From Ranitomeya imitator (taxonomy: Eukaryota), in contig NC_091291.1 in the NCBI RefSeq assembly GCF_032444005.1, positions 100,998,001-101,062,000 on the forward strand: a stretch of DNA of 64,000 bases. Reading direction: 5' to 3'. The notes under the pieces were generated by a model. The model was not told the DNA's origin. It made no database searches and worked only from the letters and a program-made list of their open reading frames with translations. Position 1 is the stretch's first letter; each line of letters opens with the position of its first letter. Below, one piece after another: positions 15,363-63,688 of the stretch. The translations under genes and the position numbers were made by a program.

Positions 15363-15538
15363 TTCCCACACTTTCATGTCTGTCTGCACAATACCAGCTC
15401 CAGATGCTGTCCTGCTCTATCACAGTTTACTGTGACACACGTCCATTGTCCCCGCTGCGGTGGGATTGGAGGATGAGTGTGGGAACCTCTTGTAAGTCCG
15501 CTCTCCACACATCATTATGCAGGGAGAGGGGTATATAG
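15363..15538 (+). promoter_or_regulatory. hes5 copy 1 proximal promoter
   Basis: TTCCCACA 15363-15370; ATTGG 15465-15469; RBPJ TGTGGGAA 15478-15485; degenerate inverted site TCTCCACAC 15502-15510; TATATAG 15532-15538. Confidence 0.8.
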
Positions 15539-15614
15539 AGGGGCGGCCGCTCACTAGTAGTCAGACAGCTCCTGCCCCACACAGCACAAGGCTACAGACT
15601 GCCGGATCTGCACC

Positions 15615-16573
15615 ATGGCCCCATGTAATATGAGGACCCCGGACCATCAGGCTGACAGCGGCCTCAGAAAGGTAAGAGCCCCCGACTAGTGACAGCGTCA
15701 CCCCATATCTCTACATGTAGACACTTATAGGAACAGGAGTCTGATGTTTTACAAGTGATCTTAGTTGTCCTCCATAGACATGGACACTGGCGCAGGGGAA
15801 TAATGAGAGATTCTTCTTTTCTGCAGCTGAGGAAGCCGGTGATTGAGAAGATGAGGAGAGATCGGATTAACAGCAGCATTGAGCAGCTCCGCGTCTTACT
15901 GGAGAAGGAGTTTCAGAGACATCAGCTCCCCTCCAAACCGGAGAAAGCCGATATCCTGGAGATGACGGTCACCTTACTGCAGCGGCACATGGCGGAGAGA
16001 GGTGAGTGTCGTGTCCGCGCTCCTCATGTGTTTCTTAAAGTAGGGTCATACAACTCTTTTCTCCGTATCTGAGAAATATTGTCTGATTATTCTGATCAGA
16101 CTTTGTTGTCATCCAAGTGCGGTGCGATTTTTTTTTCACGGCTACGTAGACTTGCATTCCCAATTTTGTTCAGAACAAAATTGGACATCTCCGATTTTTT
16201 TTCCTGACATGTGCACAGCCCTATAGAATATCATACTTACGAGTCCTCTCCTTGAAAACCACTGATAGCACTCATCTGGAAAAGTCGGTCGTGTTCTCAA
16301 GCCCTGATAGAGAGCAGAGCAGCCGGTGACGGACGCTGTCACTGACATGTTGTCTTTCCAATTCTAGATATCACAGCCTCCAGCCAGGCTCGGAGAGAAG
16401 GCTACTCCACCTGCGTCCAGGACGCCGTCACCTTCTTACCATCCCAGAATCAGCAGGATGGCTCCTTCTGCACTGGATACACTCTGTCATATGAGCTATC
16501 TACCATGAAGACGTCTAAGAAAGCAACTCCATTCACTGGAAACAAGAACAAATCTATGTGGAGACCCTGGTGA
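15615..16573 (+). CDS. hes5: hes5-like bHLH-Orange repressor, copy 1 (exons 15615-15671, 15827-16001, 16368-16573; 145 aa; divergent C-terminus)
   Basis: GT-AG introns of phase 0 and 1. MAPCNM...GLRK|LRKPVIEKMRRDRINSSIEQLRVLLEKEF...SKPEKADILEMTVTLL...|DITASSQARREGYSTCVQDAVTFL...NKSMWRPW-TGA. Confidence 0.93.
16038..16307. mobile_element. About 270-bp MITE-like insertion in intron 2 of copy 1
   Basis: Intron 2 is 366 nt versus 105 nt in copies 2-4. The extra sequence lies between tttctta and gagagcagagc and shares a motif with the repeat at 1-330. Confidence 0.7.
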
Positions 16574-22589: not shown

Positions 22590-25579
22590 AGTTGGAGCGC
22601 CCCCAGACACAGGGCCACGGGTTCTCGGTACCGGGCCTCTCTGGTTCGGTTCTGAGGCTGTCACAGTGGCTAGACCCGGTCCGCGACCCTGCTAAGGGGC
22701 GTCCAATAAAGGTGATGCAGTCTGTCAGGGGTTCGTGACGCCACCTGTGGTGTTCTGTCAGGGTGACCGACGCTGCTGTGGGGCCCGCTGGGGTGATGGA
22801 ATGGCAGCTGGATGGTATAACTTCCCACAGGTGAAGTATGTCCCCAGGGCTTCCCAGTAAGGTGGATGGTGATAGTGTGGGGTGCAGTCAATAACGAGGA
22901 CACAAGGTTGCAGTCTCTTTACCTCTTTACTGAAGACTTCAGGATCCTCAATCCAGAGCACGTTTAACAGGGCTATCAGAGACAGGCCGGCCTGATGGGC
23001 ACTTACAGAGTTTCCCTCGCAGATGGAAATCGTTGCCCACCACTAGCGCCTGTGTGTTGTAGTTCTACCCTGCTGAGCATTCAGAATAGTCCTCACAACT
23101 GCTGTTCTCGTTCGTTCGTTCTCTACAGCTCTCTATCTCTCTCTCTTTAGTTCCAGATGTTGCTAGTTTCTCGTCCCCCAGTATGTTTTGGCTAGGACGC
23201 ACCCGTATGACGGGAAGGCCTGGAGGTCTTCCGGGACCCTAGAGATGCCCCTCTCCACGCGTTGCCCCCTATGTCTTCTTAGGAAATTTAAGGTAGACAG
23301 CCAACCTATAATTAACTGTCCTGCGGAGTTTGAAGTAAGGCCTAAAGTCAGTTACTCCCGCGGTGTTCCGGCCACTGGCTACGCGCCTCAGTAGGATGTT
23401 GCCTCGGTCTCACGGCACGACTCCTACTGGTACTCCTTTTTGCTTGATCTTGTTTACACTGTTCCACAATATCCTTCGCTTCTTGTCTCTTAGGATACCG
23501 CCGCAAGGTAGTGCAGGTGCGGTTCCGTAACGTTCTATTCTGTTCGCTAGGCACGTGCCAGGTTCCCACGCCTGACAGGGATCCCCCTGTGTCTTCTCCC
23601 TGCAACACCCCCTGCCACGGGATGTTGCCTGAATCCAACCCAGTTAGCTTCTGACTAACTTTCTATCCAACCCCTAGTTTTACCAGTGTGAGGAGGGGCC
23701 CAATAAATAAAGCCTTTTGCTCCTTCTAGTGGCCGGAGTGTGAAGTGTAATGTGTGCTGGTGATACCTGGTCAGGAGAATTCCTTCAGTGCCATCAGACG
23801 TACCATCACTCCTCTTAGTGGCAGAGTGTCATACTGCAACGACCAGGTCTCTGGGGCGCTGCACAAGCAAAACCACGTAAAAAACACAAGCAAAATCACG
23901 TAAAAAACAAGCAAAAATGCATCAAAAGCACAAGCAAAAGAATGTGAAAAACACAAGCAAAAACATGTAAAAAACAAGCAAAACCGCGTAAGAATCACAA
24001 GTAAAATCGCGTAAAAAACACAAGCAAGAACGCGTTAAAATTACAAGCAAAAACATGTAAAAAACAATCAAAAATGCATAAAAAACACAAGCAAAACGCG
24101 TAAAAAACACAAGCAAAACCACGTAAATAACACAAGCAAAGCCGCATAAAAACAAGCAAAAACACATAAAAAATATAAGCAAAACAGCGTAAAAAACACA
24201 AGCAAAAATGAATCAAAAACACAAGCAAAGACGTGTAAAAAAATGCAAGCAAAAACGTGTAAAAAATGCAAGACTGAAAAATCTTCTGCAAATGCTCGTT
24301 ATGTGCACATACTCTAAGGGTCACAATGCGTCCCCATTTACCTATGTTACACGGCGACCTGTGTCGCTGCCAAAATGGTCATCTAGCTCCAGCCTTAACT
24401 AGCCGATCTTATTGGGGGATGCCATGGTCTGCCAGACATTACCCCTCTAGGGAATATATGGCACAACTATTGCATTTTTTTCCCACTTTAACATTCACCC
24501 TATTGGGTAAATATTACATTAATTATTAGTTCAGACACCAAGCAGTGATGCCAAATAAGTTATACTTTTATAATGAAGGCTCCTCTGTGATTGATGTGAC
24601 AAAGACTTTTGGAGAGTTCTCATTAATCTGCCCCGTTATTCGTTGTGTGGCTTAATTACTGTATACTGGGTGCATCGGTTGCAGTTGCTCCCCCAAGCCC
24701 TTTAGCTTAGGGGGCCAAAAGAAGTACAATACTAAATAATGGATTTATTTGGGGAGAGGGATCTTTTCTGCATCTTTGTTTCTTCCTTGAGATTCCTGGT
24801 TTGCCAGGACAGAGGCCATGAAGCCCACATGTCACATCTTCACCTCCTGAAGACATAATAAAACATTCTTTCCTGGCTTTGGTGGGTGGAGGTGGAGGAC
24901 ACACTTTCACACCTCCGTGCTAGCAGGATTCTCAGTCTCATCTGTGTTCTGGGGATTGTTGGCAGCTTTGCTTTGTTGGAAGGGACCCCTGTACAGTTAG
25001 AGGTATGGCAGGGGTCTGTCATGTGTGCAGGGTCAACATGCTCACAGCGCCCCTCATGTAGTTTTTAGGGGGAAAAAAGTGAAATACTTACTACTTTCAT
25101 TTCCAATAGCAGGTCATGCTGGGAGTTGTAGTGCTCTACATATAGAATATAATAGAAAAATATGATAATTTTGAATTGCAAGTTTATTTTGGGAATTATA
25201 GTATTACATGTATAGTGCATAATCAGAATTATATAATAGTTATGTCAAGTGATCAGGCCATGCTGGGAGTTGTACGGTGCATAGAGTATAATGGAATTGT
25301 ACTATGGTATTATTAAGTAATTGAGATCATTCTGGGGATTGTAGTGCTTTCTATATAGTGTGTAACAGAATTGTGAAAAGGATTTGTTGGGGGTTGTGGT
25401 GTTTTAGAGTAATATTTACAGTGGCATGTATAGTTTGGGCACCCTTGGTAATAATTACTGTTATTGTGAACAGTTAAGCAAGTTGAAGATCAAATGATCT
25501 CTAAAAGGCCTTAAGTTAAATATGACACATTTCCTTTGTGTTTTAGGCAAAAAAAAATATATACATAGATATATATATA

Positions 25580-25619
<40 letters not shown>

Positions 25620-25635
25620 TATATATGTATATATA

Positions 25636-26757
25636 TCTGTCGGAGTCCCACAAGGTTCAGTTCTAGGACCCCTGCTCTTCTCCATTTACACCTTTGGCCT
25701 GGGACAGCTCATGGAATCTCACGGCTTTCAGTATCATCTCTATGCTGATGACACACAGATCTACATCTCTGGACCAGATATCACCACTAGATTTCTAAAA
25801 CTTAACATGGACAAAACAGAATTCATCATCTTTCCCCCATCTCACACGACCTCCCCAACGAACCTATCCATTACAGTAAACGGCTGCCCACTCTCCCCAG
25901 TCCCACAAGCCCGCTGTCTTGGGGTAATCCTTGACACTGATCTCTCCTTCAAACCGCATATCCAAGCCTTTTCCACTTCCTGCCGCCTCCAACTCAAAAA
26001 TATTTCACGGATCCGCACATTCCTAAAAAAAGAATCTGCAAAGACCCTAGTCCATGCCCTCATCATCTCCCGCCTTGACTACTGTAACCTTCTGCTCTGT
26101 GGCCTCCCCTCTAACACTCTTGCACCCCTCCAATCTATTCTAAACTCTGCTGCCCGACTAATCCACCTGTCCCCCCGCTATTACCCAACCTCTCCCCTCT
26201 GTCAATCCATGCACTGGCTCCCCATCACCCAGAGACTCCAGTACAAAAGCCTAACCATGACATACAAAGCCATCCACAACCTGTCTCCTCCATACATCTG
26301 TGACCTCGTCTCCCGGTACTTTCCTGCACGCAACCTCCGATCCTCACATGATCTCCTTCTCTACTCCCCTATTATCTCCTCTTCCCACAATCGCATACAA
26401 GATTTCTCTCACGCATCCCCCCTACTCTGGAACTCTCTACCACAACACATCAGACTCTCGCCTACCATCGAAACCTTCAAAAAGAACCTGAAGACCCACC
26501 TCTTCCGACAAGCCTACAACCTGCAGTAACCACCGATCCACCAAACCTCTGCACGACCAGCTCTATCCTCACCTACTGTATCCTCACCCATCCCTTGTAG
26601 ATTGTGAGCCTTCGCGGGCAGGGTCCTCTCTCCTCCTGTACCAGTCGTGAGCTGTATTGTTTAAGATTATTGTACCTGTTTTTATTATGTATACCCCTCC
26701 TCACATGTAAAGCGCCATGGAATAAATGGCGCTATAATAATAAATAATAATAATAAA
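25636..26757 (+). mobile_element. 5'-truncated L2-clade LINE (RT C-terminal part, 3' UTR and (AAT)n tail) inserted in a (TA)n tract
   Basis: [40 protein letters not shown] motifs open to the stop at 26529; tail ggcgctataataataaataataataat. Short in-frame deletion after GPDIT. Confidence 0.9.
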
Positions 26758-27117
26758 TATAGATACAGTATATATATAGATATATAAATATATATTTTCA
26801 TATTTTACATTTTAAAAATTATAAAACGGAAAATGGGCCAATGCAAAAGTTTGGGCACCCTTGTGAGTTCAGATAACTTTGACCAAGGTTTCAGACCTTA
26901 ATTAGTCTGTTAGGTTTATGGCTTGTTCACTATCATCGTTAGGGAAGGCCAGGTGATGCAAATTTCCCAGCTTTATAAAAACCCAGCCTCCTCTAACCTT
27001 GTGCCAAAAAACAGCAGCCATGGGTTCTTCTGGCTGCCTAGCACTCTGAAAATGAAAATGGCGGAGGCCCAGAAATCAGGAGACGGCTATAAGAAGATAG
27101 CAAAGAGTTTTCAAGTT

Positions 27118-27843
27118 AAGGCCCCTTCACATTAAGCGACGCTGCAGCGATACAGACAACGATCCGGATCGCTGCAGCGTCGCTGTTTGGTCGCTGGAGA
27201 GCTGTCACACAGACCGCTCTCCAGCGACCAACGATGCCGGTAACCAGGGTAAACATCGGGTAACTAAGCGCAGGGCCGCGCTTAGTAACCCGATGTTTAC
27301 CCTGGTTACCATCCTAAAAGTAAAAAAAACAAACAGTACATACTTACCTACAGCCGTCTGTCCTCCAGCGCTGTGCTCTGCACTCCTCCTGTACTGTCTG
27401 TGTGAGCACAGCGGCCGGAAAGCAGAGCGGTGACGTCACCGCTCTGCTTTCCGGCTGACCGACGCTCACAGCCAGTACAGGAGGAGTGCAGAGCACAGCG
27501 CTGGAGGACAGACAGCGTTAGGTAAGTATGTAGTGTTTGTTTTTTTTACTTTTAGGATGGTAACCAGGGTAAACATCGGGTTACTAAGCGCGGCCCTGCG
27601 CTTAGTTACCCGATGTTTACCCTGGTTACCAGTGAAGACATCGCTGAATCGGTGTCACACACGCCGATTCAGCCATGTCAGCGGGAGAGCCAGCGACCAA
27701 AGAAAGGTCTGGCCCTCTAGCCCCGACCAACGACATCACAGCAGGATTCTGATCGCTGCAGTGTGTCAAACTAAACGATATCGCTAGCGAGGACGCTGCA
27801 ACGTCACGGATTGCTAGCGATATCGTTTAGTGTGAAGGTACCA
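27118..27843. mobile_element. TTAA-type MITE, family copy 2, inside Tc1 transposase sequence
   Basis: ttaaggccccttcaca...tgtgaaggtaccataa; same internal blocks as 12607-13347. Confidence 0.85.
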
Positions 27844-30962: not shown

Positions 30963-33055
30963 TCTACTAAATAATTGTCTAAGGGTCACTTCCGTCTGTC
31001 TGTCTTTCTGTCTGTCTGTCTTTCTGTCACGGATATTCATTGGTCGCGGCCTCTGTCTGTCATGGAAATCCAAGTCTCTGATTGGTCGCGGCAAAACAGC
31101 CACGTCCAATCAGCGACCGGCACAGTCCGGCGGAAAAATGGCCGCTCCTTCCTCCCCACAGTCAGTGCCCGCTCCATACTCCCATCCAGTCAGCCCTCAC
31201 ACAGGGTTAATGCCAGCGTTAATGGACCGCGATGTAATGCACTCCATATTAACCCTTTGTGACCAACTTTTAAAAAGATCTAATGTTACAAATAATAATA
31301 ATTTTAAAAAAAGGTTATTCTCACCCTCCACCGTCACGCCCTCTCCTCGGCAGTGCAAGCGGCAGGTTCCGGTGGCAAGGATGCTATGCGAGAAGGACCT
31401 TCCATGACTTCACGGTCACGTGACCGCGACGTCATTACAGGTCCTGCGCTCATACGAACCCTGGGACCGGAAGCTGCCGCGTGCACCGCACACAGGCGCC
31501 AGGACTACAAGGGTCCCTCGGAGGGTGAGTATATGTTTATTTTTTATTTTAACTCTTTTTTAACCTGTTACATACGTGTCTGGTCAATATACTACGTGGC
31601 TGGGCAATATACTACGTGACTGGCCAATATACTACGTGACTGGCCAATATACTACGTGGCTCTGCTGTATACTACATGGCTCTGTGCTGTATACTGCGTC
31701 GCTGTGCAATATACTACGTGACTGTGCAATATACTATGTGGCTGGGCAATATACTACGTGACTGGGCAATATACTATGTGGCTGGGCAATATACTACGTC
31801 GCTGTGCAATATACTACATGACTGCAATATACTATGTGGCTGGGCAATATACTACGTGGCTGGGCAATATACTACGTGACTGTGCAATATACTACGTGGC
31901 TGGGCAATATACTACATGGCTGGGCAATATACTACGTGACTGGGCAATATACTACGTGGCTGGGCAATATACTACATATCTGTGCTGTATACTACGTGGT
32001 TCTGTGCTGTATACTACGTCGCTGTGCAATATACTACGTAGCTGGGCAATATACTACGTGACTGGGCAATATACTACGTGGGCTGTGCAATATACTTCGT
32101 GGCTGGGCAATATACTACGTGGGCTGTGCAATATACTTCGTGGCTGGGCAATATACTACGTAGCTGGGCAATATACTACGTGGCTGGGCAATATACTATG
32201 TGACTGGGCAATATACTACGTGGCTGGGCAATATACTACGTGTGTGCTGTATACTACGTGGCTCAGTGCTGTATACTACGTCGCTGTGCAATATACTACG
32301 TAGCTGGGCAATATACTATGTGGCTGGGCAATATACTACGTGGCTGGGCAATATACTACGTGTCTGCTGTATACTACGTGGCTCTGTGCTGTATACTACG
32401 TCGCTGTGCAATATACTACGTAGCTGGGCAATATACTATGTGACTGGGCAATATACTACGTGGCTGGGCAATATACTACGTGGCTGGGCAATATACTACG
32501 TGGTTGGGCAATATACTACGTGACTGGGCAATATACTACGTGGTTGGGCAATATACTACGTGGCTGGGCAATATACTACGTGGCTGGGCAATATACTACG
32601 TGGCTGGGAAATATACTACGTGGCTGGGCAATATACTACATGGTTGGGCAATATACTACGTGGCTGGGCAATATACTACATGACTGGGCAATATACTACG
32701 TGGCTGGGCAATATACTATGTGACTGGGCAATATACTACGTGGCTGGGCAATATACTACGTGTCTGCTGTATACTACGTGGCTCTGTGCTGTATACTACG
32801 TCGCTGTGCAATATACTACGTAGCTGGTCAATATACTATGTGACTGGGCAATATACTACGTGGTCTGGGCAATATACTATGTGGCTGGGCAATATACTAC
32901 GTGGCTGGGCAATATACTACGTGGCTGGGCAATATACTACGTGGTTGGGCAATATACTATGTGACTGGGCAATATACTACGTGGGCTGTGCAATATACTA
33001 CGTGGACATGCATATTCTAGAATACCCGATGCGTTAGAATCGGGCCACCATCTAG
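30963..33055 (+). mobile_element. Non-autonomous Helitron-like element
   Basis: 5' TC start (tctactaaataattgtctaagg); 3' hairpin cccgat-gcgttaga-atcggg followed by CTAG|T at 33052-33056. Confidence 0.68.
31580..33003. repeat. 20-bp minisatellite (atatactacgtggctgggca), about 70 units, inside the Helitron
   Basis: Unit read directly; variants TACATG and TATGTG replace TACGTG. Confidence 0.95.
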
Positions 33056-34039
33056 TCAATATATAATGACCTGTATTCAGTCATTTTGAAAATAGTGAGA
33101 TATTTGACCCTATAGTATATTACAGAGTTTTAGAACCTTATATAATACAAACATTAAAGGGTTGTCCATTCTTCTTGATGAGCGCACCGTCACTTTGCCT
33201 CCAAGCTTCCTGCTTGCTGCTTGCAGTGCATTCCTGACACCACTTTGGACCACGCCACTTGCCCAAACTATGCACTTTTGTCGCTGCATCAGTTATCTAG
33301 GATTCCAAACCATGGCCATGTTTTTTCTCTAAACAGCGCCACATTTGTATTTGTCCTAGTTCTGGACAACATGTTAAACAGGATTTGGAACAAAGGACTG
33401 CAGCAAAGCAATGGGGAGGTGTTTCCCTGCAGACGTACGGTAATTGGATTCCTGATTTTTTAAAGATAATCATAGATATAAGCTTACTGATAGATATGTT
33501 CTTCAATATAAGAACATATTGAATCTGACTCTCTTGCACACAAGTAATGAGTATAAGCGGATGCCTGACAGCTGCAAAGCTCTGTACATCCGAACAATGT
33601 CAATAGTTTAAAACGCAAAAAACAACGAGCATTTCTTCCAAATGGGACAATCGCAATATTTATAGCAATGAATCCATATTTGAGGTGCAGAATACAGAAT
33701 AACTGTAGATATTATAATGAAACTACAAATAAACATAATCTGTATAAAACCTTAATGTCAAAAAAGACAAAAGTATTCTAGGAGTGATACATTTCCTGAC
33801 TAATCAGAAATAATGACATCACGTCTACAATACTTTTTGTCTTGTTTAACATATAGGTTTTGACGAAGATTTATCTGGTACCAAGATATATTTTTGCTTT
33901 GCATCAAAAGAAATAAAATAAATGTACAGATACATTAACATAATCTACAACATTTCTTGCCTGATTAGTACTGTCAGGGTCTGTGTCATCAACAGGACCA
34001 GATGTTCCCTGCCAGTGTCACAGTCTGAGAAAGGGGCTA

Positions 34040-34189
34040 ATCAATTGTGCCCCCTGCAATGTGTCTGATTGGATGCAGAGTGTGAGAACCGCACACAGGA
34101 CCCTGCTCCACACATCATTATACTGAGGGATTGCCCCATATAAAAACCAATCCAGCCACAGTCATCTGTTCCCCAACTGACGGCCATGT
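34040..34189 (+). promoter_or_regulatory. Diverged fifth hes5-type promoter ending in ATG at the edge of an assembly gap
   Basis: ATTGG 34068-34072; RBPJ TGTGAGAA 34081-34088; 16-nt spacer; GCTCCACAC-ATCATTAT 34105-34121 as in the other promoters; TATAAAAA 34139-34146; gccATGt 34186. Confidence 0.72.
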
Positions 34190-34839
34190 NNNNNNNNNNN
34201 NNNNNNNNNNNNNNNNNNNNNNNNNNNNNNNNNNNNNNNNNNNNNNNNNNNNNNNNNNNNNNNNNNNNNNNNNNNNNNNNNNNNNNNNNNNNNNNNNNNN
34301 NNNNNNNNNNNNNNNNNNNNNNNNNNNNNNNNNNNNNNNNNNNNNNNNNNNNNNNNNNNNNNNNNNNNNNNNNNNNNNNNNNNNNNNNNNNNNNNNNNNN
34401 NNNNNNNNNNNNNNNNNNNNNNNNNNNNNNNNNNNNNNNNNNNNNNNNNNNNNNNNNNNNNNNNNNNNNNNNNNNNNNNNNNNNNNNNNNNNNNNNNNNN
34501 NNNNNNNNNNNNNNNNNNNNNNNNNNNNNNNNNNNNNNNNNNNNNNNNNNNNNNNNNNNNNNNNNNNNNNNNNNNNNNNNNNNNNNNNNNNNNNNNNNNN
34601 NNNNNNNNNNNNNNNNNNNNNNNNNNNNNNNNNNNNNNNNNNNNNNNNNNNNNNNNNNNNNNNNNNNNNNNNNNNNNNNNNNNNNNNNNNNNNNNNNNNN
34701 NNNNNNNNNNNNNNNNNNNNNNNNNNNNNNNNNNNNNNNNNNNNNNNNNNNNNNNNNNNNNNNNNNNNNNNNNNNNNNNNNNNNNNNNNNNNNNNNNNNN
34801 NNNNNNNNNNNNNNNNNNNNNNNNNNNNNNNNNNNNNNN
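34190..34839. other. Assembly gap (650 N)
   Basis: Run of n. Confidence 1.
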
Positions 34840-35040
34840 GGCCAAAAAAGTGGAAGACAGCACACCAGGTTTTAGCAAAAATAAAAGTGGACTTTATTAC
34901 GTGGTGCAACGTTTTGGCTTCCAAAAGCAGCTTTTGGAAGCTGAAACATTGCACCACGCCATGTGGGCCCAATAAAGTCCACTTATATTTTTGCTATTTT
35001 TGCTAAAACCTGGAGTGCTGCCTTCCATTTTTTTGGTTCC
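34840..35040. mobile_element. Penelope-like inverted repeat remnant
   Basis: Imperfect foldback centred on tccaaaagc-a-gcttttgga; arms contain caacgtttt / gaaacattg and ctttatt / aataaag. Confidence 0.5.
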
Positions 35041-35099
35041 TGTATATTTGGCAAGTATATGGATTAGTTGCTTGGAGGCCTGTGCACCCATCTAATTAT

Positions 35100-35267
35100 N
35101 NNNNNNNNNNNNNNNNNNNNNNNNNNNNNNNNNNNNNNNNNNNNNNNNNNNNNNNNNNNNNNNNNNNNNNNNNNNNNNNNNNNNNNNNNNNNNNNNNNNN
35201 NNNNNNNNNNNNNNNNNNNNNNNNNNNNNNNNNNNNNNNNNNNNNNNNNNNNNNNNNNNNNNNNNNN
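35100..35267. other. Assembly gap (168 N)
   Basis: Run of n. Confidence 1.
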
Positions 35268-37309
35268 CTATATCTTCCTGCCTATTTGTATGCCTATCTG
35301 TATATGGTCTATATGATATCTATATACGGTGTCTAATTTCTTTATTTCGCTCTGACACAGACCAGATACAAACATTGGGTATTAGGAATTGTATTGAGCC
35401 AAAAGAAAGTAGAATTTTTTTCCAGCTGGGTAAAACCAAGTGGTTGACAATGTGAAGAATGCATGGGGCAGCTGGCAGGGCGCGGGCAGTGTGACATGGA
35501 GTGTGCTTCACAGTCATTTGTGAATTGCCAAACTGAACAATTCTGACCAGTATTGAGATGTCTTTATTGTCAGCTTTAGTGAATGATGGGAAAGTGTGTG
35601 GGGAGACACGAGGTGCCACTTCCAGCCCACCAGTAATGACTGCGGAGGATCTGCTGTCTGGCAGAGGTGTGTGGTAGCACATTGTGTGTGGCGGTGATGT
35701 GCACACTCCCTATGTGACATTGTAGGGAGAAAATCCAATATATCCCCTAATATTCTCAATATCCTGTGCGGATTCAGTCCATAATTTATCTTTGCAGCAT
35801 TTCCTTTACAAAGCCATATAGCTCAATGGTTGTCTTACTCAGATTGCTTCTATTCTCCCCTTATGGTGCTGCAGGCAATGGCGATTATTGTACGCAGGGC
35901 CATGCAGAGGGTTTGGAGATCTGTTTTACACAAGCTCCAAAAATGATAACAAATGAATCAGAACAACATTGTGCATTTCTTTAGATTAAAAAGGTTACTA
36001 CCAAGGGTTTGTCTGGTACTATGGTACTCATGTACAGCGCCATGGAATCAATGGTGCTATATAAATAAATAATAATAATAATACTATTTTAATTTTTTCT
36101 TATGGGTGTAAGAGCCAGTTGCGCCTGGCTCCGATCTCTGCTGGTTCATAGCAGTCACCGACCGCTTCTCCGCGCTGCTTGCGATTCTGCGGCTTCCGCT
36201 GACGCAATATCGACAGGGCTGCAGCTTCTCTTCTACTCCGCTCTGTTATCAGGGCGCAACTGCTAATGTCATGCTGATTTACAGCCGGCTCCCCACTGCC
36301 TAACTGCGGGGAACCAGCTGTCAATAAGCATGGTGTAAGAAGTCACGTCCCATCGACAGGGAAACCTGGATTGCTAACAATGGTTTCCGTTACTTTTCAG
36401 GTTTGGTAAACTCTATGTAGATAGATCCAGTGGAGAACCGGTGAGGAGCCCCATCCGCCCCTCTGGAATCTGCAGGGGAAATCAGTTTTGCCAAATGTGA
36501 CGCCGGTCATGGAAAGTCTGCGCTCGGCTTTACAGATGAAGCATATTACTGGGAACATTTCGGACATTTCTTTTTTAGGGCAGATTCTCTGCTTTCGTCA
36601 CAGTAACAATCCATTCTTGAAACATTTTAAGACAAGCAGAATTTTATTTGTATATTTATATGAAAATTCCACCTTAAAGGGAACCTGTCACCATGAAGAT
36701 GCAGACAGATCTGCTGGCACCATGTCCACCCTGAAGTGCAGTTTGCTGTAATGGGTGAATGGAGGACCGGAATAAAAATAAAATAGAATTAATATAACCC
36801 GAGTGGCTTATCTACGGTGTTATCATGTTCATCTAGGTTGTGATATAAAACAGATGGAGAAGATTTCTGAGTGCAATAAAGCGTCAAGTGTTAATCTGTG
36901 TGGTTCTGGTTGTTGTATAGCATCTAATAGAGCCGGTATGGCCTCTGCTGTGTTCCCTCCATCCCATATATTGATAACATAAAGTCTTGGCTTCAGGGCA
37001 TCGGGCAGGGCTGTAACCTTTACTCCCCTTCCTACAGATATACCAAATGTAACCCAGTCCACGGTCATGTTTATGGCCAGTGTCATACAGGTACACACGT
37101 CAGATTACACTGCATTGTCTTCCTCAATTCCTTTTCCCCCCCAGAGCCAGACATGTGCCCTTTTGATGTAGAAACTGTGACACATAACTGTGACATTGAC
37201 TCCTATTCTGTTCCCAGACCTGCTCAGACATCCGCTATAGCCGAAGCCTAAGGAGCCATTTACTACTCGCTGGTCTGTAACCAGAGGAAGGTTTTGGTGA
37301 CATTCTGTT

Positions 37310-38058
37310 AAGGTACCTTCACACATAACGATATCGTTAACGATATCATTGCTTTATGTGACGTAGCAACGATATCGTTAAGGAAATCGTTCTGTGTGAC
37401 AGCGACCAACGATCAGGCCCCTGCTGGGAGATCGTGGGTTGCTGAGGAAAGTCCAGAACTTTATTTCGTCGCTGGACTCCTGCAGACATCGCTGGATCGG
37501 CGTGTGTGACACCGATTCAGCGATGTCTTCACTGGTAACCAGGGTAAACATCAGGTAACTAAGCGCAGGGCCGCGCTTAGTAACCCGATGTTTACCCTGG
37601 TTACCAGCGTAAAAGTTAAAAAAACAAACACTACATACTTACCTACCGCTGTCTGTCCCCGGCGCTCAGCTTCTCTGCACTCCTCCTGTACTGGCTGTGA
37701 GCGTCGGTCAGCCGGAAAGCAGAGCGGTGACGTCACCGCTCTGCTTTCCGGCCGCTGTGCTCACAGTCAGTGCAGGAGGAGTGCAGAGAAGCTGAGCGCC
37801 GGGGACAGACAGCGGTAGGTAAGTATGTAGTGTTTGTTTTTTTTACTTTTACGCTGGTAACCAGGGTAAACATCGGGTTACTAAGCGCGGCCCTGCGCTT
37901 AGTAACCCGATGTTTACCCTGGTTACCCCGGTACCTCGGGATCGTTGGTCGCTGGAGAGCTGTCTGTGTGACAGCTCTCCAGCGACCAAACAGCGACGCT
38001 GCAGCGATCGACATCGTTGTCGGTATCGCTGCAGCGTCGCTGAGTGTGAAGGTACCTT
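37310..38058. mobile_element. TTAA-type MITE, family copy 3
   Basis: ttaaggtaccttcacac...gtgtgaaggtaccttta with large internal inverted repeats. Confidence 0.87.
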
Positions 38059-38273
38059 TACTTTCTTAAAGGATAAATACATAGATAATAGAAAAATACA
38101 GGGGTGGACATATCATTGGTGCAACCTGTGCAGCCGCACGGGGACCCGAGAGGTAAGGAGGCCACTACCACCTCCAAGGCAGGTGACATATGGCATTATG
38201 ATGAGCTACTGGACAGTAAAGGGCCACATACTATTCCTGCAGAGGGGCCCTTTTTGGACTGTGTCTGCCAGTG

Positions 38274-38332
<59 letters not shown>

Positions 38333-38425
38333 ATAGATAAACAGATGATAACTAGATAGATAGGAGATAGATAGATATGAGATAGATAGTAGATGACAGA
38401 TAGATAGATAGATAGATAATAGATG
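38274..38425. repeat. (GATA)n microsatellite, degenerate at the 3' side
   Basis: Read directly. Confidence 0.95.
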
Positions 38426-38444
38426 GACAATAGACTAATAGATA

Positions 38445-38572
38445 ATGATAGTGAAAAGTTGCCTTACCTAAACCCAGATGGTGGTGCCACTTCCCCTACG
38501 CGTGTTTCGGCGGCGTGCCTTCGTCAGAGGGTGTCCCATCTGGGTTTAGGTAAGGCAACTTCACACTATCAT
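38445..38572 (-). ncRNA. Type I hammerhead ribozyme motif at the tip of a 37-bp-arm hairpin (Penelope-like)
   Basis: Minus strand: ccct-CTGACGA-A-GGC-acgcc-GCC-GAAAC-acgc-GTA-gggg. Arms 38445-38481 / 38536-38572. Confidence 0.65.
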
Positions 38573-40690
38573 TTAAGGTTTTTTCAATCCTTTTTCCTCA
38601 TGTCATATGACTGTAATTATGTATTGCCATTGATATGGATTACCAATTGTTTCAGGATGCATTTACAGTATTTGTCTATGTCACAGACACGTAGTATAAC
38701 ATTGCCATTCCTTGCCATTTAGTTGAACTTGTACCTGCCTTGCTTGTTTTCCCAAGGTGGTGCCACTGAGATCTATTTTGGCTCCTTTCAGGCACTCATG
38801 GTTACTTTTTAAATAATTTTTGTTTTGCTTTGTTGCGATTACTAATATATTTTCTACTTTGTTCAATATATGTTTTTTGTCTATATGTTCCTAGTCTTTT
38901 TGTAATTGTATATTAGCTTTCTGCCCATAAATTCAGACTTTGAAGAGAAGTATTCAAATCTGCCCAGGAATTCAGACTTAAGTCTTAGAGAGGTATTCAC
39001 ACTAGACACGTAGGACCCAGCAGATTTGAGTCCATCTTGTCGTTGGCTGCTGGACTTGCATGAATTGGCCAAATTATGGGCTAAGCGTCTGATTTTTTCC
39101 TAGTATCCAGAAGCCGTATTGCTAATCATATTTTATATATTTCACATTCACATGCTTTAGCACTACAGAGTGCAACTTTTATTGTTTATAGCAAAAAATA
39201 GGACCTAAAACTTAACATTTAATCTTACATTAAAAATGTTTATTTTACTAAAAAATGTTTCAGTTTACCTTTCTTGGATCAGGGGAGTTTCTTTCAAAAT
39301 TCATGGTTCCATTGTGTCCACGCAGATATAATCTCCGCTGCTTATCGCGGATACATGGAGCCCCCTGCCTGTTAATTCTCTTTTCCACCGGTTTATTGAA
39401 ATAAGTGACTCCTCGTATCCCCGGTCACTTCTGGGTACCCTGACCCATCATATCCGGTGCTTGGACCGCTCATACTAGTCGTGGTGACCCCACATGTCAC
39501 TTCCTGAGCGTCCTTCACAGCGGCCGACACCATCCCGTGGAACGCAGGCTGATCCACAGTTACACTCGCTCAGCAGCCTATTGACGGGTGAGTACTGGTA
39601 TATTGAACTAACCATGACATTGGACTTGTGTCTTTAAGGGATTTTCTCACTCCATTATATTTACCGTATATTATAGCATTTCGATTATCCCATATTATTG
39701 GTGAGCATAAAAAGATTCACCCACCTAGATAACTGAATCTGTTTATACAACACAAAATGAGTTTTATACAGATATATTCTGAATTACAGAGAAATTGAAA
39801 AAAAATTGAAAAACGAAAACCGATTGACTTATGAGATGTGGTCAAAGGAATGTCAGTTATCAGAAAAGGATCATAGAAGTGTGTATAAAGGGGGATTGGT
39901 GGTACCTAAGATGCACTGAAAACATTAATAAATAATGTACTAGCCCTACCATGCTCCAGGGGTTGGCACCCGAATAATCTACGCAAGCGGCGAACCCACT
40001 CATCGTTGTCTCACCCTCAGTAAATAACCCTGTTGAACCCTAATTATATAAAGCTACTATATGTCAATTGTTTGTTACGACCCAATGGTGATACAGTTTT
40101 AAGGTCGATAGGTCCACATTGCTTCTCGTTGCAAAATGGTTGTATCCCAGTCGCTTTCCTCAGGGGTTTTTCCAACTCTTATCAACCCCCATTAATGTTA
40201 TTGTTGACATTTGTCCTGAATGTTCCTGATTGACATGCCTAACTAACGGGGTATCACTTTTCTTACTGATATCGCGAAGATCTTTTCCTATCCTTCTCCT
40301 GAACTCTCTCCTCATCTTGCTCACATACTCATGGCCCCATTGGCACGAGGCCTTTTAAATCAAGCTCTCACTCCGACAATTGATGAATGATCTAATTCTA
40401 TACTGTTTCCCTGTTGTTGTACTTTGGAAAGTTTTGGCCACAGATATGGCTTTACACGCCATTCAGTCACCGTATCTCTGGCATCCCGTTACACCTTCTG
40501 ACCGCCATATGGTCTCTTTCTATGTGGTGTAATGGCTGTAAACTAATCAGTCTTACAAATATCTCCCTTTTTTGAAGGTAATCTGAGGATTAGCTGTGAT
40601 TAAGTTCCCGATATCACTGTCCAATTTTAGTACCTTCCAGTTTTTGTTTTTTTAAGAAGGATCTCTGAAAGGCGGATCAGTACACAGCCA

Positions 40691-40736
40691 TTACACCCCT
40701 GATGAATCCAAGTAAAGGAGGAAACGCGTCGGGTAA
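40691..40736 (+). ncRNA. Minimal hammerhead ribozyme motif (Penelope-like)
   Basis: accc-CTGATGA-A-TCC-aagtaaa-GGA-G-GAAACGCGTC-gggt; palindromic ACGCGT stem III; predicted cleavage after GUC at 40730. Confidence 0.55.
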
Positions 40737-40857
40737 ATTATATTGTTTCAATAAGGACGGTTAATAGACGGTGTTACCCCTGCTATAAAGATTGTTTGCC
40801 GGACAAGATTTTAAGAAATTGGCTGAGACCTTTCCTGTAGCTCAGTGGTGAGCACTG

Positions 40858-40997
40858 TAGGGTGGCTCAGTAGTTAGCACTGCAGCCTTGCAATGCTGGG
40901 ATCCTGAGTTCAAATCCTACCAAGAACAACATCTGCAATGAGTGTGTATGTTCTAGATTGTGAGCCCCAATGGGGACAGTGATGACAATGTCTGTAA
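40858..40997 (+). mobile_element. tRNA-derived SINE with L2-like tail, truncated by a MITE
   Basis: A-box-like tggctcagtagtt, B-box-like gagttcaaatcc; tail tagattgtgagcccc...tgtctgtaa matches L2 3' ends at about 26600 and 60860. Confidence 0.7.
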
Positions 40998-41639
40998 AGG
41001 TACCTTCACACTGAGCGACTTTAGAACGATAACGATAGCAATCCGTGACGTTGCAGCGTCCTGGATAGCGATCTCGTTGTGTTTGACACGCAGCAGCGAT
41101 CAGGATCCTGCTGTGAGATCGCTGGTCGGAGCTAGAAGGCCAGAACTTTATTTCGTCGCTGGATCACCCGCTGACATCGCTGAATCGGCGTGTGTGACGC
41201 CGATTCAGCGATGTCTTCACTTGTAACCAGAGTAAACATCGGGTTACTAAGCGCAGGGCCGCGCTTAGTAACCCGATATTTACCCTGGTTACCTAAAAAA
41301 AACAAACACTACATACTTACATTCCGGTGTCTGTCGCGTCCCTCGCAGTCAGCTTCCCGCACTGACTGTCAGCGCCGGCCGTAAAGCACAGCGGTGACGT
41401 CAATGCTGTGCTCTCCTTTACGGCCGGCCGGCGCTCACAGTCAGTGCAGGAAGCAGAACGCCGGGGGACGCGACAGGCACCGGAATGTAAGTATGTAGTG
41501 TTTTGTTTTTTTTTAGGTAACCAAGGTAAATATTGGGTTACTAAGCACGGCCCTGCGCTTAGTAACCCGATGTTTACCCTGGTTACCCGGGGACCTCGGC
41601 ATCGTTGGTCGCTGGAGAGCTGTCTGTGTGACGGTACCT
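40998..41639. mobile_element. TTAA-type MITE, family copy 4, right arm internally deleted
   Basis: aaggtaccttcacac start; ends ggagagctgtctgtgtgacggtacct, lacking the roughly 70 bp present in copy 3. Confidence 0.8.
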
Positions 41640-41838
41640 GAGGAGGTGGTGATGGCGAACTCAGTCGAGGGGTTCAAGAGAGGCCTGGATGTCTTCCTGG
41701 AGCAGAACAATATTGTATCATACAATTATTAGGTTCTGTAGAAGGACGTAGATCTGGGGATTTATTATGATGGAATATAGGCTGAACTGGATGGACAAAT
41801 GTCTTTTTTCGGCCTTACTAACTATGTTACTATGTTAC
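41640..41838 (+). mobile_element. CR1 LINE 3' end
   Basis: EVVMANSVEGFKRGLDVFL C-terminus, 3' UTR ataggctgaactggatggac, and octamer tail (actatgtt)n. Confidence 0.8.
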
Positions 41839-42375
41839 CCTAAAGCGATGAGGAATTAATGGTGCTACATAAGAGAGTAAAATACATATAACATCAGTAA
41901 GTACTGATGTAGGTAGAGTTTAATGTGGTGGCACAGAGCTTTCAATTCCACTAAGGCCTACCATACATACAATTTTGAGACAATTTTGGAAACGCTGTCC
42001 CAGTGAGCGAGGCTCCAATACATGCGATTAGTGACATGAATATCCCATAATTAATCGGGTGTTCAGTCGTTTTGCTCCATGAGTCTTCAATGTTGTAATG
42101 TCTTTTATTTGTTCAATATATATGTATAATATACCACTGAATGTTACATTTTTAATCCCATTTCTTTGCTATAGTATTTTCTATAAAACCAAAAATGTCT
42201 CCAGGGCTGACAGGGCGGTGTCAGGAGGATCCTCACTTGTAATGCTTCATGTTACAGTGTGAATTGTTTCATGGATATTTAAATATTAGTTATGACAGAA
42301 TTACGTGTAAATATTTCCTGACTTGGTAAATCTCATAATTTACATAGGCTTCTTCATGGCTATTGATGGGGCTGT

Positions 42376-42636
42376 CATGTCAGTGACAGGTCGGGGGTCG
42401 TCACTTAGATGCACAATTTAATCCCATCCTGAGCAATGTGTGATTGGTGCAGGTCCCATCTTGTGGCCGGGGGTTCCCACACTCACATCTCCCCCCAGCA
42501 GCCTCTATTATCTCCTGTATTGGAGCAGATGGACACACGTCCATTGTCCCCGCTGCGGTGGGATTGGAGGATGAGTGTGGGAACCTCTTGTAAGTCCGCT
42601 CTCCACACATCATTATGCAGGGAGAGGGGTATATAG
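42376..42636 (+). promoter_or_regulatory. hes5 copy 2 proximal promoter
   Basis: TTCCCACA 42474-42481; TGTGGGAA 42576-42583; TCTCCACAC 42600-42608; TATATAG 42630-42636. Confidence 0.82.
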
Positions 42637-42712
42637 AGGGGCGGCCGCTCACTAGCAGTCAGACAGCTCCTGCCCCACACAGCACAAGGCTACAGACTGC
42701 CGGACCTGCACC

Positions 42713-43432
42713 ATGGCCCCATGTAATATGAGGACCCCGGACCATCAGGCTGACAGCGGCCTCAGAAAGGTAAGAGCCCCCGACTAGTGACAGCGTCACC
42801 CCCATATCTCTACATGTAGACACTTATAGGAACAGGAGTCTGATGTTTTACAAGTGATCTTAGTTGTCCTCCATAGACATGGACACTGGCGCAGGGGAAT
42901 AATGAGAGATTCTTCTTCTTTTCTACAGCTGAGGAAGCCGGTGATTGAGAAGATGAGGAGAGATCGGATTAACAGCAGCATTGAGCAGCTCCGCGTCTTA
43001 CTGGAGAAGGAGTTTCAGAGACATCAGCTCCCCTCCAAACCGGAGAAAGCCGATATCCTGGAGATGACGGTCACCTTCCTGCAGCGGCACATGGCGGAGA
43101 GAGGTGAGTGTCGTGTCCGCGCTCCTCACACCCCTCATGTGTTTGTTACTGAGAGCAGAGCAGCCGGCGATGGACGCTGTCACTGACATGTTGTCTTTCC
43201 TGTTCTAGATGTCACAGCCTCCAGCCAGACCCGGAGAGAAGGCTACTCCACCTGCGTCCAGGACGCCGTCACCTTCCTGACCCAGCACAAACAGGAGGAG
43301 CTCCAGATCCAGCTGCTGCAGAACCTCCCTGGGGCTCACACTGTGGTGTACAGGGCCGTATCTCCTCCTGTATCTCCTGTCTACCAGACCCCCATCAAAT
43401 ATAGCAGCAAAGCCTTGTGGAGACCCTGGTAA
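42713..43432 (+). CDS. hes5: hes5-like, copy 2 (exons 42713-42769, 42929-43103, 43209-43432; 151 aa)
   Basis: Intact GT-AG introns, bHLH, Orange (REGYSTCVQDAVTFL...LQIQLLQNL), ends SSKALWRPW-TAA. Confidence 0.95.
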
Positions 43433-44485: not shown

Positions 44486-44982
44486 NNNNNNNNNNNNNNN
44501 NNNNNNNNNNNNNNNNNNNNNNNNNNNNNNNNNNNNNNNNNNNNNNNNNNNNNNNNNNNNNNNNNNNNNNNNNNNNNNNNNNNNNNNNNNNNNNNNNNNN
44601 NNNNNNNNNNNNNNNNNNNNNNNNNNNNNNNNNNNNNNNNNNNNNNNNNNNNNNNNNNNNNNNNNNNNNNNNNNNNNNNNNNNNNNNNNNNNNNNNNNNN
44701 NNNNNNNNNNNNNNNNNNNNNNNNNNNNNNNNNNNNNNNNNNNNNNNNNNNNNNNNNNNNNNNNNNNNNNNNNNNNNNNNNNNNNNNNNNNNNNNNNNNN
44801 NNNNNNNNNNNNNNNGTATNNNNNNNNNNNNNNNNNNNNNNNNNNNNNNNNNNNNNNNNNNNNNNNNNNNNNNNNNNNNNNNNNNNNNNNNNNNNNNNNN
44901 NNNNNNNNNNNNNNNNNNNNNNNNNNNNNNNNNNNNNNNNNNNNNNNNNNNNNNNNNNNNNNNNNNNNNNNNNNNNNNNNNN
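44486..44982. other. Assembly gap with a 4-nt island (gtat, 44816-44819)
   Basis: Run of n. Confidence 1.
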
Positions 44983-46817: not shown

Positions 46818-46880
46818 TACATGCCTCTCCCAGGTCAAAGCCTACAAATTTAAAGGGCAGGTCAGATCAAGCATTAATCA

Positions 46881-48304: not shown

Positions 48305-48566
48305 CATGTCAGTGACAGGTCAGGGGGTCGTCACTTAGATGCACAATTTAATCCCATCCTGAGCAATGTGTGATTGGTGCAGGTCCCATCTTGTGGCCGG
48401 GGGTTCCCACACTCACATCCCCCCCCAGCAGCCTCTATTATCTCCTGTATTGGAGCAGATGGACACACGTCCATTGTCCCCGCTGCGGTGGGATTGGAGG
48501 ATGAGTGTGGGAACCTCTTGTAAGTCCGCTCTCCACACATCATTATGCAGGGAGAGGGGTATATAG
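48305..48566 (+). promoter_or_regulatory. hes5 copy 3 proximal promoter
   Basis: TTCCCACA 48404-48411; TGTGGGAA 48506-48513; TCTCCACAC 48530-48538; TATATAG 48560-48566. Confidence 0.82.
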
Positions 48567-48642
48567 AGGGGCGGCCGCTCACTAGTAGTCAGACAGCTCC
48601 TGCCCCACACAGCACAAGGCGACAGACTGCCGGACCTGCACC

Positions 48643-49374
48643 ATGGCCCCATGTAATATGAGGACCCCGGACCATCAGGCTGACAGTGGCCTCAGAAAGG
48701 TAATAGCCCCCGACTAGTGACAGCGTCACCCCCATATCTCTACATGTAGACACTTATAGGAACAGGAGTCTGATGTTTTACAAGTGATCTTAGTTGTCCT
48801 CCATAGACATGGACACTGGCGCAGGGGAATAATGAGAGATTCTTCTTCTTTTCTGCAGCTGAGGAAGCCGGTGATTGAGAAGATGAGGAGAGATCGGATT
48901 AACAGCAGCATTGAGCAGCTCCGCGTCTTACTGGAGAAGGAGTTTCAGAGACATCAGCTCCCCTCCAAACCGGAGAAAGCCGATATCCTGGAGATGACGG
49001 TCACCTTCCTGCAGCGGCACATGGCGGAGAGAGGTGAGTGTCGTGTCCGCGCTCCTCACACCCCTCATGTGTTTCTTACTGAGAGCAGAGCAGCCGGCGA
49101 TGGACGCTGTCACTGACATGTTGTCTTTCCTGTTCTAGATGTCACAGCCTCCAGCCAGACCCGGAGAGAAGGCTACTCCACCTGCGTCCAGGACACCGTC
49201 ACCTTCCTGACCCAGCACAAACAGGAGAAGCTCCAGATCCAGCTGCTGCAGAACCTCCCTGGGGCTCACACTGTGGTATACAGGGCCGTATCTGCTCCTG
49301 TATCTCCTGTCTACCAGACCCCCAACAAATACAGCCCCCCAGACAGCAGCAAAGCCTTGTGGAGACCCTGGTAG
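48643..49374 (+). CDS. hes5: hes5-like, copy 3 (exons 48643-48699, 48859-49033, 49139-49374; 155 aa)
   Basis: Intact splice sites and frame; ends KYSPPDSSKALWRPW-TAG. Confidence 0.95.
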
Positions 49375-49400
49375 TGACTGTATCCATTATGTGACTGGAC

Positions 49401-62677: not shown

Positions 62678-62881
62678 GCAATGTGTGATCGGTGCAGGTC
62701 CCATCTTGTGGCCGGGGGTTCCCACACTCACATCTCCCCCCAGCAGCCTCTATTATCTCCTGTATTGGAGCAGATGGACACACGTCCATTGTCCCCGCTG
62801 CGGTGGGATTGGAGGATGAGTGTGGGAACCTCTTGTAAGTCCGCTCTCCACACATCATTATGCAGGGAGAGGGGTATATAG
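62678..62881 (+). promoter_or_regulatory. hes5 copy 4 proximal promoter
   Basis: TTCCCACA 62719-62726; TGTGGGAA 62821-62828; TCTCCACAC 62845-62853; TATATAG 62875-62881. Confidence 0.82.
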
Positions 62882-62957
62882 AGGGGCGGCCGCTCACTAG
62901 TAGTCAGACAGCTCCTGCCCCACACAGCACAAGGCTACAGACTGCCGGACCTGCACC

Positions 62958-63688
62958 ATGGCCCCATGTAATATGAGGACCCCGGACCATCAGGCTGACA
63001 GCGGCCTCAGAAAGGTAAGAGCCCCCGACTAGTGACAGCGTCACCCCCATATCTCTACATGTAGACACTTATAGGAACAGGAGTCTGATGTTTACAAGTG
63101 ATCTTAGTTGTCCTCCATAGACATGGACACTGGCGCAGGGGAATAATGAGAGATTCTTCTTCTTTTCTACAGCTGAGGAAGCCGGTGATTGAGAAGATGA
63201 GGAGAGATCGGATTAACAGCAGCATTGAGCAGCTCCGCGTCTTACTGGAGAAGGAGTTTCAGAGACATCAGCTCCCCTCCAAACCGGAGAAAGCCGATAT
63301 CCTGGAGATGACGGTCACCTTCCTGCAGCGGCACATGGCGGAGAGAGGTGAGTGTCGTGTCCGCGCTCCTCACACCCCTCATGTGTTTGTTACTGAGAGC
63401 AGAGCAGCCGGCAATGGACGCTGTCACTGACATGTTGTCTTTCCTGTTCTAGATGTCACAGCCTCCAGCCAGACCCGGAGAGAAGGCTACTCCACCTGCG
63501 TCCAGGACGCCGTCACCTTCCTGACCCAGCACAAACAGGAGGAGCTCCAGATCCAGCTGCTGCAGAACCTCCCTGGGGCTCACACTGTGGTGTACAGGGC
63601 CGTATCTCCTCCTGTATCTCCTGTCTACCAGACCCCCAACAAATACAGCCCCCCAGACAGCAGCAAAACCTTGTGGAGACCCTGGTAG
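62958..63688 (+). CDS. hes5: hes5-like, copy 4 (exons 62958-63014, 63173-63347, 63453-63688; 155 aa)
   Basis: Intact splice sites and frame; ends KYSPPDSSKTLWRPW-TAG. Confidence 0.95.

What the first reader, a model, noticed from the sequence alone, without database searches (positions are those of the whole stretch)
34040..34839. A fifth hes5 paralog is probably hidden in the 650-N gap
Seen: the last 150 bp before the gap reproduce the hes5 promoter grammar in order (c(a)attgt-cccc, ATTGG, RBPJ site, 16-nt spacer, CTCCACACATCATTAT, TATA box), then gccATGt, then N. Copies 2-4 span 720-732 bp from ATG to stop, close to the gap size. The promoter is far more diverged than the other four and no bHLH or WRPW exon is visible after the gap. 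Inference: a distinct, non-homogenised paralog (or its pseudogene) invisible to ORF-based annotation.
Basis: partly seen in the sequence, partly recalled or inferred. Interest (0 to 1): 0.7.

Follow-up and report, generated by a model that had tools for sequence, protein, structure and literature searches.

The report
Fifth hes5 promoter ending at gap
A genuine but strongly diverged fifth copy of the Notch-responsive hes5 promoter runs straight into an unsequenced gap, so a fifth hes5 gene or its remnant may lie there, but nothing readable shows one and this is an assembly problem in an already known frog-type gene cluster.

Summary
Observation confirmed. Positions 34033-34170 are a true homologue of the core promoter of the window's four hes5 genes (nhmmer E=2e-7; local-alignment z about 19). 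It keeps the same motif order, two exactly preserved spacings and an invariant 16-mer. Overall identity is only about 55-60%, against 98-99% among the other four. The left contig ends 4 nt after an ATG.

The interpretation cannot be settled here. The flanks do not overlap. The right flank of the 650-N gap is a 195-nt foldback, transposon-like palindrome, followed by a second gap of 168 N. No bHLH, Orange, WRPW or 3'UTR similarity is found in 34840-42300. The ATG has three equally good alignments to the other copies, so it may not be the start codon.

Identity is concentrated in the functional motifs, with decayed spacers. That argues the promoter was under selection for a long time, so a transcription unit existed. 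I put about 55% on bHLH-coding sequence, intact or decayed, lying in the gaps, and about 30% on an orphan promoter.

The promoter grammar and frog hes5 cluster expansion are both published, so interest is low. The scan had already noted this promoter grammar on neighbouring DNA of the same genome.

The parts
34042..34057 (+). Distal conserved block CAATTGTGCCCCCTGC (Sox-like ACAAT core on the other strand)
   Evidence: 13/16 identical to copy 2. The Sox assignment rests on my knowledge of the consensus and was not tested.
34068..34072 (+). Inverse CCAAT box (ATTGG)
   Evidence: Invariant in all five promoters. It lies 9 nt upstream of the RBPJ core in the fifth copy and in copy 2. Published as part of the Xenopus hes5 promoter architecture (PMC7699193).
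34081..34088 (+). RBPJ/Su(H) site S1, TGTGAGAA
   Evidence: Aligns to TGTGGGAA of copies 1-4. Both fit YGTGRGAA, a consensus quoted from my own knowledge.
34089..34105 (+). 17-nt spacer between S1 and the invariant 16-mer
   Evidence: Same length in all five promoters, but only 5/14 scored positions are identical.
34106..34121 (+). Invariant 16-mer CTCCACACATCATTAT, probably holding the weaker inverted site S2 of the paired Su(H) site
   Evidence: Exact in five places in the window, each in a hes5 promoter. The S2 assignment is by position only, from the published architecture (PMC7699193).
34139..34146 (+). TATA box (TATAAAAA)
   Evidence: Aligns with TATATAGA of the copies.
34159..34164 (+). 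CAGTCA initiator-like block; inferred transcription start near 34164
   Evidence: 6/6 identical in all five promoters. The A lies 25 nt after the TATA start here and 31 nt after it in copy 2. The start site is inferred, not shown.
34186..34188 (+). Candidate start codon ATG, 4 nt from the contig end
   Evidence: Its alignment to the copies is ambiguous: three placements, none significant.
34190..34839 (.). Assembly gap 1 (650 N, size estimated)
   Evidence: No suffix/prefix overlap and no similarity between the two flanks.
34842..35036 (.). 195-nt foldback palindrome (MITE-like) starting 2 nt after the gap
   Evidence: Nested inverted repeats with 90-96% complementarity. Self-inverted blast hit. 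No hes5 similarity.
35100..35267 (.). Assembly gap 2 (168 N)
   Evidence: Together with gap 1 and the 260-bp island, the poorly known span is 1078 bp.
15434..16573 (+). hes5 copy 1 (reference copy): promoter to stop, three exons
42532..43432 (+). hes5 copy 2 (reference copy): exons 42713-42769, 42929-43103, 43209-43432
48462..49374 (+). hes5 copy 3 (reference copy)
62777..63688 (+). hes5 copy 4 (reference copy)

Best explanation
Positions 34033-34189 are the core promoter and first bases of the transcript of a fifth, old hes5-family transcription unit. It points the same way as its four neighbours and escaped the gene conversion that made their promoters 98-99% identical.

It should work as the published frog hes5 promoters do. 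NF-Y would bind the inverse CCAAT box. An RBPJ/NICD/Mastermind complex would bind S1 (TGTGAGAA), with a second weaker site inside the invariant 16-mer 17 nt away. A TATA box would set a start near 34164.

The transcribed body runs into a poorly assembled 1078-bp span: a 650-N gap, a 260-bp foldback-repeat island and a 168-N gap. I judge it more likely than not that bHLH-coding sequence lies there, either intact or as a recently broken pseudogene.

Shown: promoter homology, motif order, spacing and lack of homogenisation. Inferred: factor binding, the start site, and the presence of a gene body.
For: Homology and motifs:
- Promoter homology is significant (nhmmer E=2.2e-7, alignment z about 19), and this is the only extra hit in the window.
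- Identity is concentrated in the functional blocks (13/16, 6/7, 11/13, 16/16, 6/6), while the spacers are 5/14, 7/17 and 4/14.
- By my estimate, a run of 16 exact matches at about 55% background identity has a probability of about 0.005.
- CCAAT-to-S1 (9 nt) and S1-to-16-mer (17 nt) distances are identical to copy 2 although the spacer letters differ.
- This pattern indicates long purifying selection on a working promoter, not neutral decay.

Context:
- Homology continues to the initiator-like CAGTCA, 25 nt before the contig end.
- The unit has the same strand and cluster position as four intact hes5 genes.
- Copy 1 shows that the cluster holds old, diverged paralogues: its exon 3 is only 41% identical in protein to copy 2.
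- Frogs carry eight or more diverged hes5 paralogues per cluster (PMC8320183).
- Different Xenopus paralogues share exactly this promoter architecture (PMC7699193).
- The 1078-bp span can hold a 720-bp ATG-to-stop unit.
Against: - No bHLH, Orange, WRPW or 3'UTR similarity exists in any readable base from 34840 to 42300. The one weak match, 35416-35564 to exon 2, is at chance level: 17 of 552 control slices score as high.
- A complete hes5 mRNA is probably longer than the unknown span, so part of the 3'UTR should be readable, and nothing recognisable is. A diverged 3'UTR need not align, however.
- The right flank is a transposon-like foldback and the locus is rich in mobile elements.
- Earlier unchecked notes of this scan report an orphan hes5 promoter and a dead hes5 gene nearby in the same genome.
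- The ATG cannot be shown to be the start codon.
- No expression data were obtained.
Confidence: 0.55

Rival explanations
1. Orphan promoter relic. The gene body that once followed this promoter was deleted or replaced by mobile-element insertions, and the gaps hold only repeats. The promoter is a leftover, or has been kept as a Notch-responsive regulatory element for neighbouring genes.
For: - No hes5 exon or 3'UTR similarity downstream.
- The first readable bases after the gap are a foldback repeat flanked by another gap.
- The locus is rich in mobile elements: a Tc1-like element, a reverse-transcriptase fragment, an LTR pair and minisatellites.
- Earlier unchecked notes describe an orphan hes5 promoter module and a dead hes5 gene in the same cluster.
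Against: Motif-selective conservation and exact spacing are not expected for a long-dead promoter, so the loss would have to be recent. Homology runs right up to the contig end, so no breakpoint is visible in the readable part.
Confidence: 0.3
2. The promoter is active but drives something other than a hes5-type protein. Examples are a non-coding transcript or a chimeric transcript running into the mobile element.
For: The promoter appears constrained, while no coding sequence is visible. The ATG is not securely a start codon.
Against: There is no positive evidence. Every other copy of this promoter in the window drives a hes5 gene.
Confidence: 0.1
3. Chance resemblance, or an assembly artefact such as a misplaced or chimeric contig carrying part of another hes5 promoter.
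For: The piece sits at a contig end next to a gap, where misassemblies gather.
Against: Its sequence differs from all four other promoters at about 40% of positions, so it cannot be a misplaced copy of any of them. The statistics exclude chance. The contig continues without a break for kilobases upstream.
Confidence: 0.03

Closest known systems
Core promoters of Xenopus hes5 paralogues (hes5.2, hes5.5, hes5.7, hes5.9) and hes4, as aligned in PMC7699193 Fig. 2A; also Esr1/Esr10 (Lamar and Kintner 2005, cited in PMC3201213)
   Same: Inverse CCAAT box, paired Su(H) sites (a strong S1 and a weaker S2), then a TATA box, in that order. Different paralogues share the motifs but not the spacers.
   Different: Binding and Notch response were not tested for this copy. 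S2 is inferred by position only. The downstream gene is unread.
Frog hes5.1 and hes5.3 gene clusters (Kuretani et al. 2021, PMC8320183)
   Same: Tandem, mostly same-direction, three-exon hes5 genes of about 150 aa ending in WRPW. Many diverged paralogues per cluster; pseudogenes and partial genes are recorded.
   Different: Three of the window's copies are near-identical and a fourth is partly converted. I could not establish which cluster or which species this is.
hes5 copies 1-4 of this window
   Same: Same promoter grammar, the same two spacings, the same strand, and the invariant 16-mer and CAGTCA block.
   Different: About 55-60% identity instead of 98-99%. The TATA-to-ATG distance is 47 nt instead of 83 nt. 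S1 is GTGAGAA instead of GTGGGAA. The upstream inverted RBPJ site of copies 1-4 (TTCCCACAC) is not kept. No visible exons.

Membership tests
Notch-responsive hes5 / E(spl)-type core promoter (inverse CCAAT + paired Su(H) sites + TATA) | Inverse CCAAT box just upstream of the Su(H) sites | tested here: met
   ATTGG at 34068-34072, invariant in all five promoters and 9 nt before the S1 core, as in copy 2.
Notch-responsive hes5 / E(spl)-type core promoter (inverse CCAAT + paired Su(H) sites + TATA) | High-affinity RBPJ/Su(H) site S1 (YGTGRGAA) | tested here: met
   TGTGAGAA at 34081-34088 fits the consensus and aligns to TGTGGGAA of the copies.
Notch-responsive hes5 / E(spl)-type core promoter (inverse CCAAT + paired Su(H) sites + TATA) | Second, inverted Su(H) site S2 at paired-site spacing | tested here: inconclusive
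   The block 17 nt downstream (CTCCACAC...) is invariant in all five but fits the inverted consensus only loosely. The literature calls S2 'moderately' conserved (PMC7699193).
Notch-responsive hes5 / E(spl)-type core promoter (inverse CCAAT + paired Su(H) sites + TATA) | TATA box downstream of the paired site, with a transcription start about 25-31 nt further on | tested here: met
   TATAAAAA at 34139-34146. The conserved CAGTCA has its A at +25. The start site itself is inferred.
Notch-responsive hes5 / E(spl)-type core promoter (inverse CCAAT + paired Su(H) sites + TATA) | Activation by Notch intracellular domain / loss on Notch inhibition | not testable with these tools
   Needs a reporter assay or expression data.
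hes5 gene (Hes/E(spl) bHLH-Orange-WRPW repressor) | bHLH domain exon | not testable with these tools
   It would lie in the gap. None is found in the readable flanks 34840-42300. Copies 1 and 2 match Pfam HLH at E about 1e-11 to 1e-12; the bHLH exons of copies 3 and 4 are identical in protein to that of copy 2.
hes5 gene (Hes/E(spl) bHLH-Orange-WRPW repressor) | C-terminal WRPW | not testable with these tools
   Only four WRPW-plus-stop sites exist in the window, all in copies 1-4.
hes5 gene (Hes/E(spl) bHLH-Orange-WRPW repressor) | Start codon in homologous position | tested here: inconclusive
   The ATG at 34186 has three rival alignments to the copies. The best placement scores no better than 15% of shuffles.
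hes5 gene (Hes/E(spl) bHLH-Orange-WRPW repressor) | A transcript from this promoter | not tested

The most novel reading that the evidence does not exclude
The gap hides an intact, expressed, strongly diverged hes5 paralogue that is missing from annotation. Its unconverted promoter would preserve the ancestral state of the cluster's promoters, showing that gene conversion homogenised some neighbours (copies 2-4 and the 5' half of copy 1) while skipping a gene lying between them.
Probability: 0.3. Interest if true: 0.3.

Novelty: new member of a known kind. Interest (0 to 1): 0.2.

Why it matters
If a gene is there, the hes5 count for this genome is one too low. A paralogue with its own unconverted Notch promoter would be a useful contrast for studying how gene conversion and selection shape frog hes5 clusters. 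If no gene is there, this is one more orphan promoter in a transposon-rich cluster. In either case it does not change what is known about hes5 regulation; it mainly flags an assembly gap worth closing.

Tried and rejected
- Continuity across the gap: there is no suffix/prefix overlap and no similarity between the flanks. Right-flank reading frames show nothing hes5-like.
- Hidden exons after the gaps: tblastn with each exon of copy 2 and exon 3 of copy 1, run exon by exon, found only the four known genes.
- A weak nhmmer match of 35416-35564 to the bHLH exon looked tempting, with an acceptor-like ttccag followed by CTG. It has a stop at codon 10 and scores no better than 17 of 552 control slices, so I rejected it as chance.
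- 3'UTR similarity after the gaps: none.
- More diverged promoter copies: a five-promoter profile found none.
- Shared upstream minisatellites as a mark of one duplication unit: the arrays have unrelated units.
- GC and CpG profiles: uninformative.
- Literature search for the 16-mer: no paper holds it.
- Contig ends at the other gaps are in ordinary sequence, so a gap alone does not prove a repeat.
I made no attempt to read the gap's letters from any other source.

Full report
**What is in the window.** Four hes5 genes lie on the + strand, with start codons at 15615, 42713, 48643 and 62958. Each has three exons. Exon 2 of copies 1 and 2 matches Pfam HLH at E about 1e-11 to 1e-12, and exon 2 of copies 3 and 4 is identical in protein to that of copy 2. 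Each gene ends in WRPW plus a stop. Copies 2-4 are 96.8-99.4% identical over about 1 kb. Copy 1 shares only a 5' block, 15434-16026 (98.6%), and its exon 3 is 41% identical in protein. The cluster therefore contains old paralogues that gene conversion has partly overwritten. The window has four N runs: 34190-34839, 35100-35267, 44486-44815 and 44820-44982.

**Check of the observation.** The 16-mer CTCCACACATCATTAT occurs exactly five times in the window, each time in the same place within a hes5 promoter. With the copy-2 promoter as query, nhmmer finds the four known promoters plus 34041-34132 at E=2.2e-7. A local alignment scores 32 against 8.7 +/- 1.2 for shuffles. A profile built from all five promoters finds no sixth.

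Identity to copy 2 is concentrated in blocks:
- Distal CAATTGT..CCCC.CTGC block: 13/16.
- Inverse CCAAT: 6/7.
- RBPJ site S1: 11/13.
- The 16-mer: 16/16.
- CAGTCA initiator-like block: 6/6.
- Spacers: 5/14, 7/17 and 4/14.

The distances from CCAAT to S1 (9 nt) and from S1 to the 16-mer (17 nt) equal those of copy 2, although the spacer letters differ. ATG-to-stop spans of copies 2-4 are 720, 732 and 731 bp.

**Continuity across the gap (the test requested first).** The left contig ends at 34189, 4 nt after an ATG. The right contig starts at 34840. There is no suffix/prefix overlap and no similarity between the flanks. The right contig is only 260 bp long. Of these, 34842-35036 form a 195-nt foldback palindrome resembling a miniature transposon, and a second gap of 168 N follows. 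The poorly known span is therefore 1078 bp, not 650, and the sizes are estimates. "In frame" has no meaning here, because nothing on the right side resembles hes5 coding sequence in any frame.

**What lies after the gaps.** Exon-by-exon tblastn and nhmmer with the whole copy-2 gene find no bHLH, Orange, WRPW or 3'UTR similarity between 34840 and 42300. One weak match, 35416-35564 to exon 2, follows an acceptor-like ttccag. It has an early stop and is at chance level: 17 of 552 control slices score as high.

**The ATG.** The last 14-25 nt before the gap align to the copies in three ways:
- ATG to ATG.
- ACGGCC--ATGT to ATGGCCCCATGT, which would make the homologous start codon ACG.
- ACTGACGGCCATG to the 5'UTR stretch ACTGCCGGACCTG, which would put the true start inside the gap.

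None is significant; 15% of shuffles reach the best score. "gccATGt" is therefore a candidate start codon, not an established one.

[quoted passage not shown] From established knowledge of paired Su(H) sites, the exact spacing matters for cooperative binding of Notch complexes. That would explain why spacer length is kept while spacer sequence is not. By my estimate, a 16-match run at about 55% background identity has a probability near 0.005. The promoter thus shows heterogeneous constraint, the mark of long purifying selection rather than neutral decay. Binding, the start site near 34164 and Notch response are inferred, not shown.

**Gene or relic.**
- *For a gene body in the gaps:* the constrained promoter; homology up to the contig end; the same strand as four intact neighbours; room for a 720-bp unit; and the known abundance of diverged hes5 paralogues in frog clusters (PMC8320183).
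- *Against:* no recognisable 3' part in readable sequence; a transposon-like right flank in a locus rich in mobile elements; and earlier, unchecked notes of an orphan hes5 promoter and a dead hes5 gene nearby.
- *Neutral:* gaps elsewhere in the window begin in ordinary sequence, so the gap alone does not imply a repeat.

My estimates are:
- 55%: bHLH-coding sequence in the gaps, roughly 30% intact and 25% broken.
- 30%: orphan promoter.
- 10%: promoter driving something else.
- 3%: artefact.
- The small remainder is left unassigned.

**Limits.** I searched the spliced gene models exon by exon by reference and left out the joined-protein step. I did not establish the species.

**Novelty.** The promoter grammar and the frog hes5 expansion are published, and the same grammar was already noted by this scan on adjacent DNA (s1-307453). 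At most this is a new member of a known kind, hidden by an assembly gap.

Noticed in passing
window 45204-46819: Tc1/mariner-type transposon. Its 202-nt terminal inverted repeats are 100% identical. It has an intact 355-aa ORF (45472-46539) with HTH_Tnp_Tc3_2 and DDE_3 domains, so it looks recently active. It sits just downstream of hes5 copy 2 and next to two gaps.
   Followed up: partly
window 15434-16573: hes5 copy 1 is a gene-conversion chimera. The stretch from the promoter into the start of intron 2 (15434-16026) is 98.6% identical to copies 2-4. Intron 2 carries extra sequence, and exon 3 is only 41% identical in protein, though it still ends in WRPW.
   Followed up: partly
window 16569-16688: A 60-bp unit is duplicated in tandem (91% identical). 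It starts within the last codons of copy 1 and runs through its stop codon into the 3'UTR.
   Followed up: no
window 34842-35036: A 195-nt near-perfect foldback palindrome (MITE-like) with no other copy in the window. It begins 2 nt after gap 1 and is followed 63 nt later by gap 2.
   Followed up: partly
window 569-4274; 31573-33005; 46881-48014; 49400-50028; 54875-55884; 61484-62477: Six long minisatellite arrays with unrelated units of 19-32 nt, several lying a few hundred bases upstream or downstream of hes5 copies.
   Followed up: no
   Followed up: no
window 25522-26529: A 335-aa ORF with a partial reverse-transcriptase domain (RVT_1, E=1.4e-9): a retroelement fragment.
   Followed up: no
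window 12605-13350, 27113-27827, 37295-38063, 40980-41632: An interspersed repeat family of about 650-750 bp (79-91% identity), present in both orientations and with an internally palindromic part. One copy lies 2 kb after gap 2.
   Followed up: no
window 44816-44819: A four-letter island (GTAT) between two N runs of 330 and 163; an assembly oddity.
   Followed up: no
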